A stretch of 63,891 nucleotides of DNA, counting the filler, from Reticulomyxa filosa (Eukaryota > Protista > Foraminifera), in the NCBI GenBank assembly GCA_000512085.1. It is 21 parts of 21 records of this genome, joined end to end, with 100 filler letters (N's around TTAATTAATTAA, not from the genome) between each part and the next. Parts side by side here need not be neighbours in the genome. Positions count along the whole stretch, not along the records: positions 11,133 to 18,797 come from ASPP01029371.1; 20 more parts are not named here. One strand, 5' to 3'. The notes beneath the pieces were generated by a model. The model worked only from the letters and a program-made list of their open reading frames with translations. It did not search any database and was not told where the DNA came from. The translations under genes were made by a program, and so were the position numbers. Position 1 is the first letter of the stretch. Each line of letters begins with the position of its first letter. Shown here piece by piece: positions 11,133-18,797 of this stretch.

Positions 11133-11962
11133 GTGGTATTGTGGGTAATACCAATAAATTGAGCAGGTGGAGGAGCTTCAATGTTGGCGATCCACTCAGT
11201 CTTGGCATAATTTATCTCAATACCATGCGATTGTTCGAGTGTTCCCAATGAAACCATTGCTTGTGTAATTGTTGCTGAAGAAGTTGCAGCCAGCGTTAGA
11301 TCATCGTGATATGCAGCGTGATAGATATTATTTAATCCGGATAATGCGGTCTTTAGGGCGTCTGCTAGTACGATGGCGAAGAGAGCTCCCCCTAAAGGAT
11401 CGCCCTGGTGGACACCTGACTGAGATAGTATCGACGATCCGTTAGGTAGGAAAAGAGTTGTGTGCGAAGAGTAGCATCCTTTGACGTATCCAAACAATTC
11501 GGGTATTTCTTTTCTAACCAGCTCAATGACTCTGGATCTTTTGCATGAATTAAAGGCATTCTTGAAATCGACTTTGACTGCAGCTGCATCTTTGATCGGT
11601 CTAATGTGCTGGAGGACGGCCTTAAAGCCATGGATGAATAGTTCGATGCCTGCCTTAACGTTAATGCCGAATTGATTGGGGCCCACAATGCGCTTAATCT
11701 TTTCGGCATGCCTTTTCATCAAAATTGCGCCCGCGGATCTCCTCAACAATGACCCAATTGCTATTGGTCTTGGACTACCATCGGGCTTGGCGATCCCAAT
11801 TAGCCTTGCTCCATATGCGATGGGGGCTGCACTTTGACAGACCATTCCGTTAATAATTAACGTCGTTACCTTGGCCCAATTGGATAGTGTACCGGATTCA
11901 TATTCGAATGGAACAAGATCAATTAGATGCTGGGCAGCGAACAGGTCTACGCCTCCTGCTGA
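11133..11962 (-). other. Non-LTR reverse transcriptase domain of ORF2
   Basis: Motifs SAGGVD…HL, KPDGSPRPIAIGSLLRR, QFGINVKAGIE, KVDFKNAFNS, GVHQGDPLGGALF, AYHDD (11300-11311) and GIEINYAKTE. The RPIAxG/QFG/NAFNS pattern is typical of CRE/SLACS/Cnl1/MoTeR-type RTs. Confidence 0.95.
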
Positions 11963-14900
11963 TGTTCTTCCCAATTTTCTGGTATAAGCGATTAGTTCGT
12001 CTACCGATATGGGGTCGTGTGCGGGGATAGGGGCCAGTGTGTGAATGACATCATCGGATTCCAAAGAATGCATTAGTTCTATGGGTGGGGCCTCCGGTGG
12101 GTGTTTCTGTTGCAGTTGTTGAATGGTGTTTTCATCGTATTTTATGGGTTGGCTGGGGGTCAATGCTTTGAAGGCTTTTGATAATTCACCCAACGCCGTT
12201 AGCTTGATAGCCTTTGCGTGTGATGCGTTCGTTTTTGCTTGTTTGGATGGGTTCAATTCTCTAGCTTCATTCGCCGCTATGATTGCGTTAGAATGTTCGC
12301 AAAAATCTTTCCACAATTTCAGCAAATTGTTTTCTTTCCATAATTTTATTCTGCTTATAATAGCCTTGGTAGTTGCGTTAGCGTGTCTGGAGCCCCCTCT
12401 TCCCGGGTCCCATAATATAAGCCTTGTGAAAAGAAGCCATTTGGTCCATGCTGCATCGTCGTTGTTTGTTGCCACTTCTCTAAGAATCCATGCCGTTGTC
12501 GATGCGATTGAGCTTCGTGCATTTTTAGGGACGCGACCAATAATTTTGGCTGGTTTGTTGATAATCTCCTCCATGGAGGGTGGTTGCCAATTACTACTTT
12601 CATCTTCGTACTTCTGCTCGGCAGATTGATGTGACCTGGAACGGTGATTCCGGAAGGCCCTTTTCTGGATGACCATATCTTCATGGCACTTCTTGTGCAT
12701 ATTATCCCATGCGACCGTACTTGGTAATATTTGCCTACATCTGTGACAAATGATTCTGCCAAATGCTTGAAAGTACGATTGTGGTACGCGCGCCCCGGCT
12801 TCGTCCGACATGTGTGTGTTGACGTGGATATGGAGCCCTGCTTCGGTTTTGAGTACCGAGCTGCATCCGTGAACCGGGCATTCAAAGGAGTTAGCCTTTC
12901 TGCTTGGGATATCGGTTGCTTGCTGCGGGGGATCCGGAGAGTGAATTGGCATGACCGTGAATAGCTCGTCGCGTTCGAATGAAATGTCGGAGTTGTCATG
13001 GTTAATTGACTCCGTATTGTGTGTATGTTCCGTGTTTGGAGGTTGATCTGCAATTATATTCGTGTTGGGATCCGTTGATTGAAAGAAATGGCCGCCTATG
13101 GAAAAAACATTTTCGATATCGTGTGGGTCTGCCATGTGATTGCTGTTATAATTATCAAACAATTTACGCGGTTCATTATGGTGTATGTTGTCATTAGGGA
13201 TTGTGCGTGGCGGTTCAACGAATAGACTGCGTCTAACACTGCCATTGGTGAGTGCGTTGTCAGCGCCCTGTGCATGACCATTTGAATGCATCGTGCTTGA
13301 TATTTTGGGAGATGACTTGGAGGTCTTGTGGCGAGCATCCTTCTTTTCCGTTTTGTTATTTCTGTATAAATGAACCGCGTCTGGATCGATGTCAGGTTGT
13401 TCGTCGTTGCATTTCATGTCGTTCCCGATTGATCTCGTGTTGGTGCTATGTTGGATGATAGCTTTCGCAGGTGCTTGATTCAAGTTCGACCATGTGCGAT
13501 TCGTATCATAATCGTATGAGTCCAAAGGAGGCGTCACATTCTTTTCACGTTCCCCTACATGATCGTGCACAAGGTGATGATGCACCTTTTTGATTGCAAG
13601 TGATGGGCTCAGGGCGGTATCGAGGACGGCGGAGGACAGAAGACTGGATGCGCTTTGTTGTTGTTTTTTTGATGTTACTGTTACATCAACTTTTCGCGTT
13701 TTGGGGGAAATGCTCGTTCTGTGGTCATCGTTTGATTGTTGCGCTTCTTTAAGCGATGAAGATGGAATGCAGTGGCTAGGTTGTGGGCTTCCATTCGTGG
13801 GCTGGGTTTGGGGTTTATCATGTTGAATTGTAAAATGTGTGTGTGGAGGCGTCAGTTCGTTTGATTTTGTGTGTTCCGCACTGTGTGTAGCTTCATTGAA
13901 ATTATTTTCATTGTTATTGGTGCTTGTATTCTTTTCACCGTTTGATTCGTCGGTAGGCCGTTGTAGTTGTTCCTTTTCCGGTGGGCCTGTTAAGACTATG
14001 TTAAGTTCCTTCGGCAATACTTTGATATGAGAAATTTCTGCAGCAAATTGGAGAATTTCGTCAGTTGAGGATGCCACTCTAACTGTGGGATTAATTACAA
14101 ACATTAATGATATGTTGGATGACCTTGCCACACATGATAGTAAAGCTTTCCGCCATTCGCCACAACCGCTCTGGTTGCGATAATTCGTTTTGGATTTGTT
14201 GAGATTTTTAAAAATAGTTCGGAATTGTTTTAGGCCTGATGAAACACATGCCGATTCAAGAGATTGCAGAATTTCATTATGGATGTAAATCTGATTTTGA
14301 AACCCTTTATGATGTCGAGTTAAATTATCTAACGTTTCACCTACTAAATTAACAATAAAAATGTTACTTTTCATTTGTGCGACCTCATGGTCATTGTTAA
14401 CGAAAGTTTGACAAATTGACAATTGGAATATTGTGTGGCCTGATGGTGGAGAGTGTCCTGTGGTTTGAACTTGGAGTTGGGAATGAGCAGCTTTCCTAAT
14501 ATCAACGAGTGCATTTTCAAGGTCTGCAATATTATCAATATTTCTTTTGGATAGCTTCGATGGGTTGATTGACGAATGGCCTTTCTTCTGGTCGTTGGAG
14601 ATTGCATTAATATTGGCATCGTTTAATAAGTCATATGCACGAATTTTTGTTACATTTGTGCCGTAAAATTCGACTGCCGTAATGTTTAACAAAATGGTCA
14701 GTGCGCTAGTGCATCTGAACAATTCACCCACTATTGATTGTGTTGTCGGAGTTAAGACATCTCTTATCGGTGGCAGGCCCGGTGCGAGTAGTTGACCGTA
14801 TATGCAGACCATACCGGAGTAACCATCAAGAGCCATTGCAACAGTTGGGCCATTAATTTGTAGAATGGCATCTTTGAGGTCTGCTGATGGGCCAAAGGCC

Positions 14901-15259
14901 TTATCAAAGATGTAGTGATTACCCGCTCGTGATGTGGTTCCGGATCTTGTGGATAATATATTGTCGGTGACTTTGATGTATTGTTCCTTTGTTCCGCTTA
15001 ATTCAGTATCCTCAATTAGTGCGTATGTCTTGATGGGGATACCCTTTTGCGTCCCGGCCCATGATAAAGATGAAACTTTGCTGTCGGAGCAAACACCAAA
15101 ACGATGCATATTCAAAGATGGTTTGTGATTTGAAGCTGCTGCTTGCGAATGCGTCATACTTGCGACGATTGGTTGCCACTGTTGCTTTGGTACGAAAGAG
15201 CTAGTGGTGTCACTGGCAGCATCGGCTGTATACGAAGTACAGGATACCCGTGGGTCCAT
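11133..15259 (-). CDS. ORF2: degenerate kinesin motor domain, disordered linker, C2H2 zinc fingers, reverse transcriptase (truncated in the RT C-terminal region)
   Basis: Uninterrupted frame of about 1375 codons. Start is either ATG 15259 or ATG 15157. Domains are listed separately. Confidence 0.9.
12683..12886 (-). other. C2H2 zinc finger plus a second Cys/His finger in ORF2
   Basis: FECPVHGCSSVLKTEAGLHIHVNTH (C-x4-C-x12-H-x3-H), followed by CHRC…HKKC. Confidence 0.85.
14021..15037 (-). other. Kinesin motor-like domain (ORF2 aa ~75-413) with degenerate nucleotide motifs
   Basis: Ordered matches to the kinesin consensus: YIFDKAFGP, PTVAMALDGYSGMVCIYGQ, AVEFYG…AYDLL, SGHTIFQLSI, SNIFIVNLVGE, ESACVSSGL, ISLMFVINP…STDEILQFA. 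Confidence 0.85.
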
Positions 15260-18200
15260 GCTCTTTCTTTGCTATTAATGATCTCTATTGAGTCGTTGAT
15301 GGGCTGCGGTTTTGCGATGCCGGTTGTTTGGAGAAAGGTCCTTGTAAGGAGATTGTCAGCGACAAATATGTGAGGTTTCTCGACATGCGGCTGGTCTTGC
15401 TTTGCCTGCTTCGGCGCGGGGCTGCATTGCGATGGGGACTGGTTAGTTTGCAAGTGCTCCCTTTGTATATGGGCCTGGTTTTCGATTATTACCACTGCGG
15501 ATGATATGGGCCATGGTGGGGTTGTTTTTTCCACCTCTAAACTCGCTGTCTGGATGTCGATTGTTGGATGATCAATACGTTGAGTCAGTGCGGGTGGTAT
15601 GACGGCTGGTGTTCCGGTGGACAGTGATATTTCAACGGTCTGGCTTAGAACAATGGGAACTGGAACTTGGCTTGGATATTCGCGGGTGGACGGCTTTGGT
15701 GTGCTTGACGAATGTAAATCACTTGTTGTGACAGCTGGTAGTGCCAATTGGCTTCGAGGGGGATAAAGATTGGTAGCTTCGGGGATGGATGGTACACTAT
15801 GCAATGCGGCACCGTTGATGCTCGACACAGTTGGCGCTGTTGAGCGTACTTCAGGGACGCTTTCGGCGGAAGATGTTGGATGATTTTTGGTGGACTTACG
15901 ACTTGGCTTACGCGATAGCCAGTGGTCCATCTGAATGGTAGCCTCGCGGCTTTGTTTCTCCGGATTATTTTGTTGCGTGGTTCGGTTGGTGGCTTTCATG
16001 TAACGGGACGATGTGCTTCTGTGAGGGAGATTCCTGGTCTTCAAGTTTTGTTTCGGAATTACTACGAAAAATTCCTCGTCCTTCGTGTCAGGTTCGGAAT
16101 CGATATCGAATAATGCGTCCAGTTGCTCGCTCGGTGTACTGGACTCGTTATCATCAAAATCTTTGCCTCTAGGAAGTTCCGGGCTGGGGTATGTTATTAA
16201 ATTCGACGAATGGCAGTCGTTGTGCGAAGTCGATATGTGGATGGTAGTACTGCTATTGGATATCTTCTTTGTATATTGCGGGACTGCATGACTGGGACTG
16301 GGTTCTAAAACCACTGATCCAATGGGTGTTTCACGAGTCGCTGTTTGGAGAAGTTCGCCAGGGACCATGTCGGGTCTGAAATCGAGCGGATCACGTTGGG
16401 GCAGGGCCGATGGAGATGATGTCGATTTTTGTTGGTTTTGGTGAGGCATACAGTTGAAGATTCCTGTGGTTGAAATGCCTTCACAGAAGTTTTGTGACGC
16501 GTTCTCGAGTTTGGCAAGCGTGGTTGGTACTTGGCTCATTTGTGGTACCTTTTGTGATGTTGGTGGTATGGAATTCTCCCACTGGAACTCTATGTCTTTC
16601 GTTCCGTGCCTCCTGGGCTCATTCTGGATTGGAGCGTCTGCGATACTTTGAATCGCGGGAAGCGGTCCTGTTGACGGTAATGGTTTAACTAGTGGTGAAG
16701 TGATTGGCCTTATTGTCGGTATTTGGGGGCCTTGCGCTTGATCGCACTCACGTCGTGAAGGTTGTAGCGAATTCGCGATTTGGGAACAATGCAGTTTGGA
16801 TATGATGGCAGTGATAGAGTTGGCAATAATTTCTTGATTATAAGTTGGTACCTGTTGACTGGTTTGCCCGTTGGGAGATATGGAGGGGAAAGCTCTTTCG
16901 TCTTGTAGCTTGGTGGTACTTGTCACATGTTGACTGGAGGGGATATTCCGAGAGTTTTCCGCCAGTATCCGATGCTTGACGATTCCGCTACTACTATTGG
17001 GCCATGTGATTGCTGCTAGGGAAGTGGCATCGGGAGGAACGACTGCCGAAAGCGATGGAATGCTTGCTGGATCACTAGAGGACGGTGCTTGCGCGGAGGG
17101 TGGAAGTGGTCGCGTGGTGGGGACGGATTGTGTCGTTTGGCTAGAAAAAGCCATCCCCGTGGGTGCGATCGAATTTACCATTGATTCATCTCCAAGTGTT
17201 TGCGGGGGGGTGAATGGAGCCCATGTTGTGCCAAACTTCGGCCTCGGGATGTCTGTCGGTGTCAGGTGGGCGGGTATTTTAAGCTCAATCTTTTGCCGGT
17301 GGCCTGTGTAGTGGTGATTGAATGCATCATTACTACTGCCACCTGTGTAGACTGTCGGTGAAATTTGATAATCCACAAACGATTGGTCGCACGGGGACGA
17401 TTGCTTTTGACTTTGGTATAATAAATGCGATTCGCAATTGACTCTGGATGCATTAAGGTTTTGTGTTGTCCTTGTTGTTGAATGCAGGTAATGAGCGTTT
17501 CGAGGCGAGGTGGTGCATGTTTGTCGTTGCTCTATGCCCGGGAGAATCCAAGAGGGATCAGTCGCAGTACCTCCTTTATTACTACCGATTGTCGGTTGAG
17601 TATTGTGCAAAATCATCGTGGTGGACGGATAAGAGTTTGTTTTTTCAATACGCTTTTTCTTTTGCGTGGTACTATTGGTTTCGCAGTGATGCCAAGTTGC
17701 TGTGCCAGTTTCGCGTGTGCTTCCGCCTCCCGTTCCAGTTCCGCCTCCGCTATCCTTACTTTTCCGTCTTCGACTTCCTTTTCCGTTTTCGTTTTCGCTT
17801 TCACTTGACTTTTCACCACTGTTTCTAGTCCAACTTGGACTCCGGCGTCCTCTAGTGTGTTCCATGCCACTTTGAAAATGACTTCTGCTTCTACTATTAA
17901 GGATAGTAGTGCTGCAATCTCGCAAGGGGTCCCTTTGGGACTTGCCACTCCTTGATGATCCGATGATGAGTTGATGATGATGGTCGAACTTTTTATCCGG
18001 GGTTCCCAATGAACTTTGATCGTAGTCTGCCAAATTCTTACTTGTCGGATTTTTCTTTTTTGATTTCATTTCGCCCCTTTTTGAATTTTGATCTGGTTGA
18101 TAATTCTCTTTTTGATACACTTTTGTGCCATTTGATGATGATTTAGCATTTTTTGCTTGTTTATACGTCGATATTTTGCTTTGCTCACTTTGGATTTCAT

Positions 18201-18441
18201 TTTCAACAATTTCTTTGCTTGACATTCCGGATACTTTTTCAAAATCTGTAAATAGATTTTTGGGGATGTGGACGGGAGTGGGAGTGGGAGTATGAGTGTA
18301 ATTCAATTCTGAAAGCTGCGATGATGCGTCGCATTTTTTAAACAATGTCAATGGACGGTCTATTGTTTGCAAGTTGGTTAGTCCAGTATTTGACTTTTTA
18401 AGAGCAAAGTTGTTATCATTTACTTCGGCTATTTCTTGCAT
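15154..18441 (-). CDS. ORF1 of the retroelement, about 1095 aa, Ser/Pro/Thr/Gln-rich and apparently disordered
   Basis: Uninterrupted frame from ATG 18441 to TGA 15156-15154. No introns. No CCHC knuckle or RRM recognised. Confidence 0.75.
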   Translation of the reverse strand: MQEIAEVNDNNFALKKSNTGLTNLQTIDRPLTLFKKCDASSQLSELNYTHTPTPTPVHIPKNLFTDFEKVSGMSSKEIVENEIQSEQSKISTYKQAKNAKSSSNGTKVYQKENYQPDQNSKRGEMKSKKKNPTSKNLADYDQSSLGTPDKKFDHHHQLIIGSSRSGKSQRDPLRDCSTTILNSRSRSHFQSGMEHTRGRRSPSWTRNSGEKSSESENENGKGSRRRKSKDSGGGTGTGGGSTRETGTATWHHCETNSTTQKKKRIEKTNSYPSTTMILHNTQPTIGSNKGGTATDPSWILPGIEQRQTCTTSPRNAHYLHSTTRTTQNLNASRVNCESHLLYQSQKQSSPCDQSFVDYQISPTVYTGGSSNDAFNHHYTGHRQKIELKIPAHLTPTDIPRPKFGTTWAPFTPPQTLGDESMVNSIAPTGMAFSSQTTQSVPTTRPLPPSAQAPSSSDPASIPSLSAVVPPDATSLAAITWPNSSSGIVKHRILAENSRNIPSSQHVTSTTKLQDERAFPSISPNGQTSQQVPTYNQEIIANSITAIISKLHCSQIANSLQPSRRECDQAQGPQIPTIRPITSPLVKPLPSTGPLPAIQSIADAPIQNEPRRHGTKDIEFQWENSIPPTSQKVPQMSQVPTTLAKLENASQNFCEGISTTGIFNCMPHQNQQKSTSSPSALPQRDPLDFRPDMVPGELLQTATRETPIGSVVLEPSPSHAVPQYTKKISNSSTTIHISTSHNDCHSSNLITYPSPELPRGKDFDDNESSTPSEQLDALFDIDSEPDTKDEEFFVVIPKQNLKTRNLPHRSTSSRYMKATNRTTQQNNPEKQSREATIQMDHWLSRKPSRKSTKNHPTSSAESVPEVRSTAPTVSSINGAALHSVPSIPEATNLYPPRSQLALPAVTTSDLHSSSTPKPSTREYPSQVPVPIVLSQTVEISLSTGTPAVIPPALTQRIDHPTIDIQTASLEVEKTTPPWPISSAVVIIENQAHIQREHLQTNQSPSQCSPAPKQAKQDQPHVEKPHIFVADNLLTRTFLQTTGIAKPQPINDSIEIINSKERAWTHGYPVLRIQPMLPVTPLALSYQSNSGNQSSQV

Positions 18442-18732
18442 TGCAAGATAACAAAAGAAATACAAAGTTGTTTTTGGAAGTATCTAATCAACAAAATGTA
18501 GCTAAAATAAAAAACAAAGAAAAACAAAAAAGAACAAAAAAACAAAAGGGTATTCATTTAAACTTTTGTTTTTTTTTTTAAACAAAAATTGACTTAAAAT
18601 TATAATTATTTTTTTTAAATAAAATTTTAATAAAAAATAAATATATATTTAATAAAAATTAAATTTTTTTTTAAAAATTAATAAAAAAAGAAATTTTAAT
18701 ATAACTTAAAACATAAAAAGTTAAAAGCTAAA

Positions 18733-18797
18733 TTAGGGGCTTAGGGCTTAGGGCTTAGGGCTTAGGGCTTAGGGCTTAGGGCTAGGCTAGGCTAGGC
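18733..18797 (+). repeat. Telomere-like tandem repeat: TTAGGGGC (TTAGGGC)6 (TAGGC)3
   Basis: Read directly. The G-rich strand runs 5'->3' toward the contig end, as expected at a chromosome end. Confidence 0.85.

What the first reader, a model, noticed from the sequence alone, without database searches (positions are those of the whole stretch)
11133..15259. Kinesin motor domain fused in frame to a non-LTR retrotransposon reverse transcriptase
Seen: one uninterrupted, intronless ORF carries at aa ~75-413 every block of the kinesin head in the right order and at plausible spacing. The matches are YIFDKAFGP~FTFDxVF; PTVAMALDGYSGMVCIYGQ~PLVxxVLxGYNGTIFAYGQ; AVEFYG…YDLL~YLEIYNE…DLL; SGHTIFQL~SRSHAIFTI; NIFIVNLVGE~KLNLVDLAGSE; and LMFVINP…STDEILQFA~MIATISP…ETLSTLRFA. 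About 380 aa of disordered linker, two zinc fingers and a CRE-like RT follow. Established: RLE-type non-LTR elements carry N-terminal zinc finger or Myb domains, and some have captured proteases, PHD or other domains. I know of none with a kinesin head. Inference: the retrotransposon RNP may engage microtubules. It could ride cytoplasmic transport between the nuclei of a multinucleate cell, or reach spindle- or telomere-associated sites.
Basis: partly seen in the sequence, partly recalled or inferred. Interest (0 to 1): 0.95.

Follow-up and report, generated by a model that had tools for sequence, protein, structure and literature searches.

The report
Retrotransposon carrying a dead kinesin head
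A family of jumping genes in the giant foraminifer Reticulomyxa filosa has captured the motor head of a host kinesin and kept it under selection after its ATP site decayed, which suggests these elements hold on to microtubules, something I found described for no transposon.

Summary
The piece is a whole 7,665-bp Reticulomyxa filosa contig. On its minus strand an uninterrupted ORF (15259 to the contig edge at 11133) encodes a kinesin-derived domain (aa 75-415; Pfam Kinesin 39.9 bits, cut-off 29.3). A disordered linker, two zinc fingers and a reverse transcriptase follow in the same frame.

The fusion is not an assembly artefact. Five further contigs from three more subfamilies join a kinesin domain to the same zinc-finger/RT module, and two short contigs add two subfamilies that hold the domain only. 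The intact 1,828-aa paralog L001 adds the C-terminal R2-type restriction-like endonuclease. All element-borne kinesin domains form one clade (99/99) inside an orphan kinesin group with foraminiferal members, so the capture happened once.

The head in this window is not a working motor. The P-loop, switch I and switch II are destroyed here and in subfamily B, while basal subfamilies keep the P-loop. The domain is still under purifying selection (omega 0.135). Its best-kept parts match the tubulin-contacting face of kinesins, and its worst-kept parts are the nucleotide pocket.

My best reading is an ATP-independent microtubule tether for the retrotransposon's protein or RNP. That function is inferred, not shown. 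A kinesin-less sister family exists. I found no such fusion outside R. filosa or in the literature searched.

The parts
15154..18465 (-). ORF A: 1,103 codons (first ATG at 18441), Ser/Thr/Pro/Gln-rich, with no recognisable domain. It is probably the hypervariable disordered N-terminal region of the element's polyprotein, put out of frame with ORF B by one base.
   Evidence: It is open for 1,068+ codons, against a maximum of 231 in 500 shuffles; the other two frames carry 30 and 65 stops. There is no Pfam hit, no atlas relative, and no similarity to the upstream regions of other subfamilies. In L001, L006, L005 and L007 the equivalent upstream region is in frame with the kinesin domain.
15257..15262 (-). 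Frame break between ORF A and ORF B. The window lacks one base relative to subfamilies B and D just before the ATG of ORF B, which puts ORF B in the -1 frame.
   Evidence: DNA alignments and three-frame translation.
11133..15259 (-). ORF B: 1,375 codons, cut by the contig end inside the RT. It holds a short leader, the kinesin-derived domain, a linker, two zinc fingers, a conserved pre-RT region and the RT.
   Evidence: By comparison with L001, about 435 residues are missing (rest of RT/thumb, CCHC, endonuclease).
15203..15256 (-). Conserved leader block (aa 2-19), where homology between subfamilies A, B and D begins.
   Evidence: A 52-nt block is 83% identical to L001 while the flanks do not align. 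The same peptide block occurs in L006.
14015..15037 (-). Kinesin-derived pseudo-motor domain (aa 75-415).
   Evidence: Pfam Kinesin 39.9 bits; PDB phmmer; AF2 plus Foldseek; clade of element-borne kinesin domains; omega 0.135 in the sister subfamily.
14744..14800 (-). Degenerate P-loop region (aa 154-172). The GxxxxGK[ST] motif is replaced by a Pro/Leu-rich loop.
   Evidence: Alignments. It is only 18% identical between subfamilies A and B, and model confidence is low here. The NCBI gene model removes 84 nt here as a GT..AG 'intron'.
14438..14467 (-). Switch I remnant (aa 265-274). Only the final Gly-His of the SSR(S/G)H motif survives.
   Evidence: alignment.
14294..14350 (-). Switch II remnant and L11 (aa 304-322). 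The Asp of DxxGxE is replaced by Asn, and the loop has diverged.
   Evidence: alignment; 26% identity between A and B.
14132..14293 (-). Alpha4-L12-alpha5 segment (aa 323-376), which in kinesins is the main tubulin-contacting face. It is the best conserved part of the domain.
   Evidence: Helices are placed by the AF2 model. A-versus-B identity is 45% for alpha4, 60% for L12 and 90% for alpha5. The role of these elements in tubulin contact comes from general knowledge of kinesins.
12893..14014 (-). Linker (aa 416-789): low complexity, rich in Ser/Thr/Pro/Asn/His, presumably disordered.
   Evidence: No Pfam hit. It has the highest dN of all regions (0.78 against L001; omega 0.39 in L001 versus L004).
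12812..12880 (-). Zinc finger 1 (aa 794-816), C-x4-C-x12-H-x3-H.
   Evidence: Read from the sequence. It is conserved in every family member, including the kinesin-less ones. Pfam zf-C2H2 scores only weakly. UniProt names the paralog 'C2H2-type domain-containing protein'.
12683..12748 (-). Zinc finger 2 (aa 838-859), C-x2-C-x13-H-x2-C.
   Evidence: Read from the sequence; conserved in L003 and L001.
11795..12682 (-). Conserved pre-RT region (aa 860-1155), which corresponds to the N-terminal extension of non-LTR RTs.
   Evidence: About 59% identical to L001 over aa 786-1155. It aligns with R2 proteins upstream of the RT core in the profile search.
11144..11794 (-). Reverse transcriptase core (RVT_1, aa 1156-1372), truncated by the contig end.
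   Evidence: Pfam 65 bits; 78% identical to L001. The family profile hits R2 proteins at E 1e-23 to 1e-20, ahead of LINE-1 ORF2p at 6e-15.
18466..18736 (-). AT-rich (about 28% GC) leader between the telomere-like repeat and ORF A. It is either 5' UTR or flank.

Best explanation
The window holds one copy (here called subfamily A) of a diversified family of non-LTR retrotransposons of Reticulomyxa filosa. They are of the restriction-like-endonuclease type and are closest to R2. Their large ORF reads: a long disordered N-terminus, a kinesin-derived domain, a disordered linker, two zinc fingers, a reverse transcriptase, and a CCHC plus PD-(D/E)xK endonuclease.

Shown: the kinesin domain was captured once from an orphan kinesin group with foraminiferal members. 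All six element subfamilies found have kept it. Basal subfamilies (C, E, F) still have a P-loop and switch I. In the crown subfamilies A (this window) and B the nucleotide pocket has been destroyed, so this copy cannot hydrolyse ATP. Even so, the domain evolves under purifying selection.

Inferred: selection maintains the tubulin-binding face (beta5-L8 and alpha4-L12-alpha5). The domain would then act as an ATP-independent, rigor-like microtubule-binding module. It would tether the element's protein, and through cis-binding its RNA, to the very dense and highly dynamic microtubule network of this giant syncytium. That could keep the RNP near nuclei, carry it passively on moving microtubules, or lead it to spindle microtubules.

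I put about 0.95 on the structural and evolutionary part and about 0.5 on the microtubule-tether function.
For: Identity of the domain: Pfam Kinesin scores above its cut-off in the window (39.9 bits), L001 (42 bits) and L007 (86 bits). PDB phmmer gives kinesin-1. The AF2 model (pLDDT 83.9) matches kinesin motor domains by Foldseek at E about 1e-19.

The fusion is real. A kinesin domain and the same zinc-finger/RT module lie in one frame on six contigs. These are the window, L001 (intact 1,828-aa ORF), L002, L003, L004 and L007.

It is a transposon family. There are multiple copies, some decayed by frameshifts and stops (L002, L004, L005, L007). The 3' UTR is conserved between L001 and L004. 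The RT and endonuclease are under strong constraint, with omega 0.05-0.07. The family profile hits R2 proteins best and weakly aligns the R2 endonuclease motifs.

Single capture: the seven element-borne domains form one clade with 99/99 support, nested in an orphan kinesin group. That group includes two Bolivina argentea (foraminifer) proteins.

Motif decay: P-loop, switch I and switch II states were read from the alignments and translations.

Selection: L001 versus L004 gives omega 0.135 in the kinesin domain (dS 0.42), against 0.39 in the linker. Window versus L001 has saturated dS, with dN of 0.44 in kinesin, 0.78 in the linker and 0.14 in the RT.

Conservation pattern between A and B: P-loop 18%, switch II/L11 26%, L8 region 60%, L12 60%, alpha5 90%.
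Against: No experiment or expression data exist. No sequencing run could be listed, so transcription, translation and read-level support are untested. Microtubule binding is inferred from which segments are conserved, and their assignment to the tubulin interface rests on the AF2 model and general kinesin knowledge. The AF2 fold was predicted from an alignment dominated by true kinesins, which biases it towards that fold. L11, which is also part of the interface, has diverged. No coiled-coil neck follows the head. Even the 'basal' heads have non-canonical switch II motifs. The window copy has a one-base frame break between ORF A and ORF B and lacks its 3' end, so this particular copy may be dead. 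Everything comes from one fragmented assembly of one species.
Confidence: 0.6

Rival explanations
1. The kinesin fold has been re-used for something other than microtubule binding. It could be a rigid scaffold or oligomerisation module for the RNP, a decoy that binds host kinesin partners or regulators, or a nucleic-acid or chromatin-binding surface.
For: The domain is constrained (omega 0.135) although the ATPase site is gone, so some non-motor function is selected. The element-specific three-residue insert before alpha5 and the long stem branch of the A+B clade show remodelling. A kinesin-less sister family transposes without the domain.
Against: The best conserved segments are those that contact tubulin in kinesins. 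Known ATPase-dead kinesin-like domains (Vik1/Cik1, KIF26; my own knowledge) still bind microtubules. Nothing in the sequence points to another partner.
Confidence: 0.25
2. The domain in this element is an active motor that walks the RNP along microtubules using ATP, which is the first reader's 'riding' idea taken literally.
For: Basal subfamilies C, E and F keep a GxxxxGK[ST] P-loop and the SSRGH switch I. The ancestral captured head was probably active. The head is at the N-terminal side of its neck, as in plus-end motors.
Against: In the window and in subfamily B the P-loop, switch I and switch II are all destroyed, and the pocket segments are the least conserved. In C, E and F switch II is also non-canonical: the Gly or Glu is replaced, or an insert is present. 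No dimerising coiled coil follows the head.
Confidence: 0.04
3. The domain is a neutral passenger, a decaying relic of a transduced host exon with no function for the element.
For: The catalytic motifs have decayed. The domain evolves faster than the RT. A kinesin-less sister family exists.
Against: The domain is retained without stops over 340 codons in A and B although synonymous sites are saturated. Its omega of 0.135 is clearly below the linker's 0.39. It is present in all six subfamilies of a deep clade. A neutral 1-kb insert would be lost or broken.
Confidence: 0.05
4. This is not a transposon feature. Either it is an assembly chimera or a retrotransposon inserted into a host kinesin gene, or it is a domesticated host gene family that fuses a kinesin and an RT.
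For: The assembly is highly fragmented, with 50,809 scaffolds (PMC13746701). L002 looks like a mosaic of two subfamilies. NCBI annotates L007's product as 'kinesin family member 4'.
Against: The same order in one reading frame recurs in four subfamilies at 25-47% protein identity in the domain. Element-borne heads form their own clade. Decayed copies, a conserved 3' UTR and an intact RT plus endonuclease under strong constraint are what a mobile family looks like.
Confidence: 0.04

Closest known systems
R2 and other RLE-type ('early-branching') non-LTR retrotransposons (R2, CRE, NeSL, R4, Hero, Utopia)
   Same: N-terminal zinc fingers, a central RT and a C-terminal CCHC plus PD-(D/E)xK endonuclease, with no APE domain. 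In seven of the eight kinesin-bearing copies the head is in frame with the ORF upstream of it, as expected for a single large ORF. The family profile hits R2 proteins best (E 1e-23) and weakly aligns the R2 endonuclease motifs.
   Different: It carries a roughly 340-aa kinesin-derived domain and 400-1,100 aa of disordered sequence upstream of the fingers. No Myb domain was detected. The clade within the RLE group, and any target-site specificity, could not be determined.
Non-LTR elements that captured accessory domains (NeSL-1 with a Ulp1-type cysteine protease; PHD-finger-bearing relatives)
   Same: A host-derived domain sits N-terminal to the RT in the same ORF. The nearest non-Reticulomyxa relatives found here carry PHD fingers at that position (P0102, P0106).
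   Different: The captured domain here is a cytoskeletal motor head. I found no report of that in a retrotransposon in three literature searches. The NeSL protease is recalled from my own knowledge.
ATPase-dead kinesin-like domains: Vik1/Cik1 motor-homology domains and kinesin-11 (KIF26A/B)
   Same: A kinesin fold without a working nucleotide pocket that is still retained under selection. In these known cases it binds microtubules (my own knowledge).
   Different: Those are cellular proteins that work with or as parts of motors. This one is part of a retrotransposon polyprotein, and its microtubule binding is untested.
Selfish elements that encode kinesins: maize Ab10 KINDR and TRKIN kinesin-14s (PMC7462060); kinesin genes of giant viruses
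   Same: A selfish genetic entity carries its own kinesin-family gene.
   Different: Those are separate, catalytically competent genes that move chromosomal knobs or act in infected cells. They are not a domain within a reverse-transcriptase polyprotein.
Orphan kinesin group found in environmental transcript-like contigs and in Bolivina argentea (P0006-P0053)
   Same: This is the source lineage of the captured head. It shares unusual alpha4 and L12/alpha5 signatures that differ from mainstream kinesins, and the element clade nests within it.
   Different: The cellular members are about 600-aa proteins with intact P-loop, switch I and switch II, followed by a charged, probably coiled-coil tail. 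They have no zinc fingers or RT.

Membership tests
Kinesin superfamily (motor domain, PF00225) | Sequence match to the family model above the curated threshold | tested here: met
   39.9 bits against a cut-off of 29.3, covering model positions 25-327 of 327. The paralogs score 42 and 86 bits.
Kinesin superfamily (motor domain, PF00225) | Kinesin motor fold | tested here: met
   AF2 on alignment A3 gives pLDDT 83.9 and pTM 0.85. All top Foldseek PDB matches are kinesin motor domains, with E 3e-19 and TM 0.6-0.75. Caveat: the alignment contains true kinesins, and the single-sequence model failed.
Kinesin superfamily (motor domain, PF00225) | P-loop GxxxxGK[S/T] for nucleotide binding | tested here: not met
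   In the window and in subfamily B it is replaced by a Pro/Leu/Ser-rich loop. It is kept in subfamilies C, E and F.
Kinesin superfamily (motor domain, PF00225) | Switch I (SSRSH-type) and switch II (DxxGxE) motifs | tested here: not met
   In the window only the Gly-His of switch I survives, and switch II starts with Asn and is out of register. Subfamily B has lost both.
Kinesin superfamily (motor domain, PF00225) | Microtubule binding and microtubule-stimulated ATPase | not testable with these tools
   There is only indirect evidence: the L8, L12 and alpha5 segments are the best conserved.
RLE-type non-LTR retrotransposons (R2 group in the broad sense) | Non-LTR-type reverse transcriptase | tested here: met
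   RVT_1 scores 65 bits. The family profile's best PDB hits are R2 proteins (E 2.7e-23), followed by LINE-1 ORF2p.
RLE-type non-LTR retrotransposons (R2 group in the broad sense) | C-terminal CCHC motif plus PD-(D/E)xK restriction-like endonuclease | tested here: inconclusive
   The window is cut before this region. The paralogs L001, L007 and L008 have the Cys/His motif and RHD / PGD / D / K motifs. The alignment to the R2 endonuclease is only weak (9.8 bits, conditional E 1e-5). There is no Pfam or PDB single-sequence hit.
RLE-type non-LTR retrotransposons (R2 group in the broad sense) | N-terminal zinc-finger DNA-binding motifs and no APE endonuclease | tested here: met
   Two conserved Cys/His patterns are present in all members. 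No APE/Exo_endo_phos hit appears in any Pfam scan. The Pfam finger models themselves score only weakly.
RLE-type non-LTR retrotransposons (R2 group in the broad sense) | Multi-copy, with degraded copies; defined ends and target site | tested here: inconclusive
   Multiple copies and decayed copies were shown. Element ends and target sites are not recoverable from these short contigs.
No Rfam RNA gene lies next to the copies.
Telomere-associated non-LTR retrotransposons (HeT-A/TART, SART/TRAS, Giardia GilT-like) | Copies abut telomeric repeats or chromosome ends in a fixed orientation | tested here: inconclusive
   The window copy lies 270 bp from a terminal (TTAGGGC)n-type array, with its 5' end distal. 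No other contig reaches an element's 5' end. The R. filosa telomere repeat is undescribed (PMC13746701).

The most novel reading that the evidence does not exclude
A retrotransposon lineage encodes its own cytoskeletal-motor-derived module and uses it to attach its RNP to microtubules. It began as an active kinesin head (subfamilies C, E and F still have a P-loop) and evolved into an ATP-independent tether. In a centimetre-scale syncytium with extreme microtubule-based transport, this would be the first transposon-encoded microtubule-engaging domain. It may be linked to delivery to nuclei, spindles or chromosome ends, since this copy abuts a telomere-like repeat.
Probability: 0.45. Interest if true: 0.9.

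Novelty: new variant of a known kind. Interest (0 to 1): 0.82.

Why it matters
Retroelements and viruses are known to borrow host motors through adaptor contacts. An element that carries a motor head inside its own polyprotein would be a new solution to the problem of moving or anchoring an RNP in a very large cell.

The family also offers a natural series from a P-loop-bearing head to a pocket-less one that is still under selection. That series is useful for asking what a kinesin fold does without ATP.

On the practical side, these copies inflate kinesin gene counts in R. filosa. One is annotated as 'kinesin family member 4', and the large kinesin repertoire of this species is cited in the literature (PMC13746701). 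The public gene models also cut false introns out of these ORFs.

Tried and rejected
- Single-sequence AlphaFold2 of aa 61-433 failed (pLDDT 30) and was replaced by an alignment-based model.
- Read or RNA support: the look-up of sequencing runs listed no run. Junction support rests on independent contigs instead.
- Two metagenome scans were run. The kinesin-domain query found no relative. The RT query found 80 loci, none with a kinesin domain in six-frame hmmsearch. Only about 16 of those loci have enough upstream DNA, so this is a weak negative.
- Long kinesins among the profile hits carry no RT.
- ORF A has no Pfam hit, no atlas relative and no BLAST similarity to the upstream regions of other subfamilies.
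- Programmed -1 frameshifting between ORF A and ORF B was considered. I rejected it as the simplest reading because the conserved leader block must be read in the ORF B frame. The window also lacks exactly one base that subfamilies B and D have at that point. I saw no slippery heptamer when reading the overlap, but ran no systematic scan.
- The 84-nt GT..AG 'intron' of the NCBI model was considered. I rejected it because it is in frame and stop-free, and it contains the conserved end of strand beta3.
- Target site: Rfam found no RNA gene on four full-length-type contigs, and the 3' tails share nothing across subfamilies.
- The RT tree could not decide whether the kinesin-less family lost the domain or never had it; the result is a trichotomy.
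- The R. filosa genome paper (Glockner et al. 2014) is not held in the library.
- Complex prediction was not used, because no tubulin sequence can be supplied under its rules.
The coordinates in 'parts' were therefore computed by hand from residue numbers.

Full report
WHAT IS THERE

The piece 11133-18797 is an entire 7,665-bp contig of Reticulomyxa filosa, assembly GCA_000512085.1. Its annotated product RFI_32957 comes back as the self-hit on a contig of exactly that length. All coding sequence is on the minus strand.

ORF B starts at 15259 and runs 1,375 codons without a stop to the contig edge. ORF A (18465-15154, 1,103 codons) lies upstream and overlaps ORF B by about 100 nt in another frame. 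ORF A is a real reading frame. It is open for more than 1,068 codons, where 500 shuffles of the same sequence never exceed 231, and the other two frames carry 30 and 65 stops.

THE KINESIN CLAIM

Pfam places Kinesin PF00225 on aa 98-412 of ORF B. It scores 39.9 bits (cut-off 29.3) and covers nearly the whole model. RVT_1 falls on aa 1156-1372. A plain phmmer search against PDB sequences returns kinesin-1 first (E 7e-7), followed by kinesin-5 and CENP-E.

A profile of this domain and its paralog, scored against 1.84 billion representative proteins, gives only 88 hits. These are family copies followed by kinesins. A single-sequence AlphaFold2 run failed (pLDDT 30). With a 34-row alignment the model reaches pLDDT 83.9 and pTM 0.85, and its best PDB matches are all kinesin motor domains. 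The dips in confidence fall on the former P-loop, switch I, L11 and L12.

The head is catalytically dead, however. The GxxxxGK[ST] loop is replaced by a Pro/Leu-rich loop. Of switch I only Gly-His remains. Switch II begins with Asn instead of Asp.

THE FUSION IS REAL AND IS A FAMILY TRAIT

Public R. filosa proteins and their contigs yield eight kinesin-bearing copies. I group them into six subfamilies.

- A: the window.
- B: L001, L002 and L004. L001 has an intact 1,828-aa ORF holding the kinesin domain (42 bits), the fingers, the RT and a C-terminal Cys/His motif plus endonuclease-like motifs. L002 and L004 are about 84% identical to L001 in DNA and are broken by frameshifts.
- C: L003. The head lies in one frame with a single in-frame stop, followed by the same fingers and the start of the pre-RT region.
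- D: L006. This holds an upstream ORF, the leader block and the start of the head.
- E: L005. This holds the head with one frameshift, and the contig ends after it.
- F: L007. NCBI names its product 'kinesin family member 4, partial'. It has Kinesin at 86 bits plus RVT_1, with RT and endonuclease downstream.

Six contigs in four subfamilies therefore join a kinesin head to the same finger/RT module in one frame, at 25-47% identity between heads. That rules out a chimeric assembly or a chance insertion into a host kinesin gene.

WHAT KIND OF ELEMENT IT IS

A profile of the finger-to-C-terminus region hits solved R2 retrotransposon proteins best (E 2.7e-23 to 1e-19), ahead of LINE-1 ORF2p (6e-15). 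It also produces a weak extra alignment of the C-terminal motifs to the R2 endonuclease. No APE domain is found anywhere.

The family is thus an RLE-type non-LTR retrotransposon.

A kinesin-less sister family exists in the same genome (P0097-P0100; L008 has an 1,801-aa ORF). It shares the fingers, RT and endonuclease at 47-50% identity, but has about 780 aa of low-complexity sequence instead of a head. A maximally sensitive hmmsearch finds no kinesin remnant in it. The RT tree leaves F, A+B and the kinesin-less clade as a trichotomy. Gain in one branch and loss in another cannot be told apart.

ORIGIN OF THE HEAD

The nearest non-element proteins are about 600-aa kinesins from short transcript-like environmental contigs. 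They share unusual alpha4 and L12/alpha5 signatures with the element heads. Two members come from the foraminifer Bolivina argentea.

In a maximum-likelihood tree the seven element-borne heads form one clade with 99/99 support, nested in this group. The order is ((C,F),(E,(D,(A,B)))). An earlier tree with fewer rows agreed at 92/89 support. This points to one capture from a host-type orphan kinesin.

Motif states follow the tree. C, E and F keep the P-loop and the SSRGH-type switch I, but all three have altered switch II motifs. A and B have lost all three motifs. D is cut at the P-loop.

SELECTION

Between the window and L001, synonymous sites are saturated. dN is 0.44 in the head, 0.78 in the linker, 0.32 in the finger/pre-RT region and 0.14 in the RT.

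Within subfamily B (L001 versus L004, dS about 0.3-0.45), omega by region is:

| Region | omega |
|---|---|
| Kinesin head | 0.135 |
| Linker | 0.39 |
| Finger/pre-RT region | 0.19 |
| RT | 0.054 |
| Endonuclease region | 0.065 |

Because L004 is itself decayed, these values are upper bounds for the active lineage. The pocket-less head is therefore maintained by selection.

Between A and B the least conserved segments are the former P-loop (18%) and switch II/L11 (26%). The most conserved are the beta4-beta5/L8 region (60%), L12 (60%) and alpha5 (90%). In kinesins the latter elements contact tubulin. That role is established knowledge, but the mapping here rests on the model.

MOST LIKELY MECHANISM

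Shown: the domain is kinesin-derived, it cannot bind or hydrolyse ATP in the canonical way in this copy, and it is kept under purifying selection within a mobile-element polyprotein.

Inferred: it works as a nucleotide-independent microtubule-binding module. Known dead kinesin-like domains behave this way (Vik1/Cik1, KIF26; my own knowledge). It would tie the element's protein or RNP to the microtubule network of this syncytial cell, whose rapid bidirectional microtubule-based transport is classic (cited in PMC13371060). I give this about 0.5.

The alternatives are a re-used scaffold or decoy (0.25), a true motor (0.04 for this copy), a neutral relic (0.05), and an artefact or host gene (0.04).

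STATE OF THIS COPY

ORF B is in the -1 frame relative to ORF A. Where subfamilies B and D read straight through into the conserved leader block, the window lacks one base. That loss also creates the ATG of ORF B.

The ancestral arrangement is therefore one giant ORF. Here it would be at least 2,440 codons up to the contig edge, and about 2,900 if complete. The window copy either carries a one-base deletion or sequencing error, or it expresses ORF B from its own ATG.

The upstream regions are hypervariable, and no two subfamilies are alignable there. The NCBI model of this gene removes 84 nt around the dead P-loop as a GT..AG intron. The segment is in frame and stop-free, and it holds the conserved end of strand beta3. 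I therefore regard the intron as a prediction artefact.

SEARCHES FOR PRECEDENT

Three full-text searches found no paper describing a kinesin domain in a retrotransposon. The R. filosa genome paper is not held. [quoted passage not shown]

Metagenome scans found no further kinesin-RT fusion, though most contigs were too short to tell. Long kinesins among the profile hits have no RT.

VERDICT

It is a new variant of a known kind, an RLE non-LTR retrotransposon with an accessory domain of a type I found described nowhere. Interest 0.82.

Noticed in passing
window 18737-18797 (contig end), with 18466-18736 next to it: A perfect 7-mer array GGGCTTA x6.7, then short variants, runs to the very end of the contig. 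Its G-rich strand points 5'->3' outward, which is the orientation of a telomere. About 270 bp of 28%-GC sequence separate it from ORF A, so the element's 5' end faces a putative chromosome end, as in HeT-A/TART-type arrays. The R. filosa telomere repeat is undescribed (PMC13746701).
   Followed up: partly
L002:1-2297 versus L001:921-3211: L002 is a mosaic. Its first about 1,350 nt (head plus linker) are 93-100% identical to L001, and the rest (fingers and pre-RT) only 63-77%. This is either recombination or template switching between subfamilies that moves the kinesin module, or an assembly chimera of two repeat copies.
   Followed up: partly
window 14734-14817; also L003 near 1070 and the RT part of L001: Public gene models of these elements splice out in-frame pieces (84 nt with GT..AG here), or jump over a stop or frameshift. 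The deposited proteins (RFI_32957, RFI_30086, RFI_29435) are therefore not the true ORF products.
   Followed up: yes
L007:5125-5429: The contig of subfamily F ends in a run of 12 A, 305 nt after the ORF stop. This may be the poly(A) 3' end of the element. Subfamily B copies L001 and L004 share a conserved 3' UTR of at least 170 nt, with a 56-nt insert in L004.
   Followed up: partly
P0102, P0106, P0107 (environmental relatives of the RT): The nearest RT relatives outside R. filosa carry a PHD finger N-terminal to the RT. This group of elements seems prone to swapping N-terminal accessory domains.
   Followed up: no
L008 (ASPP01026421.1) and P0097-P0100: A kinesin-less sister family in the same genome has an intact 1,801-aa ORF. 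It has a long Gln/Asn/Ser-rich N-terminus containing short peptide repeats. It would serve as a natural control for what the head adds.
   Followed up: partly
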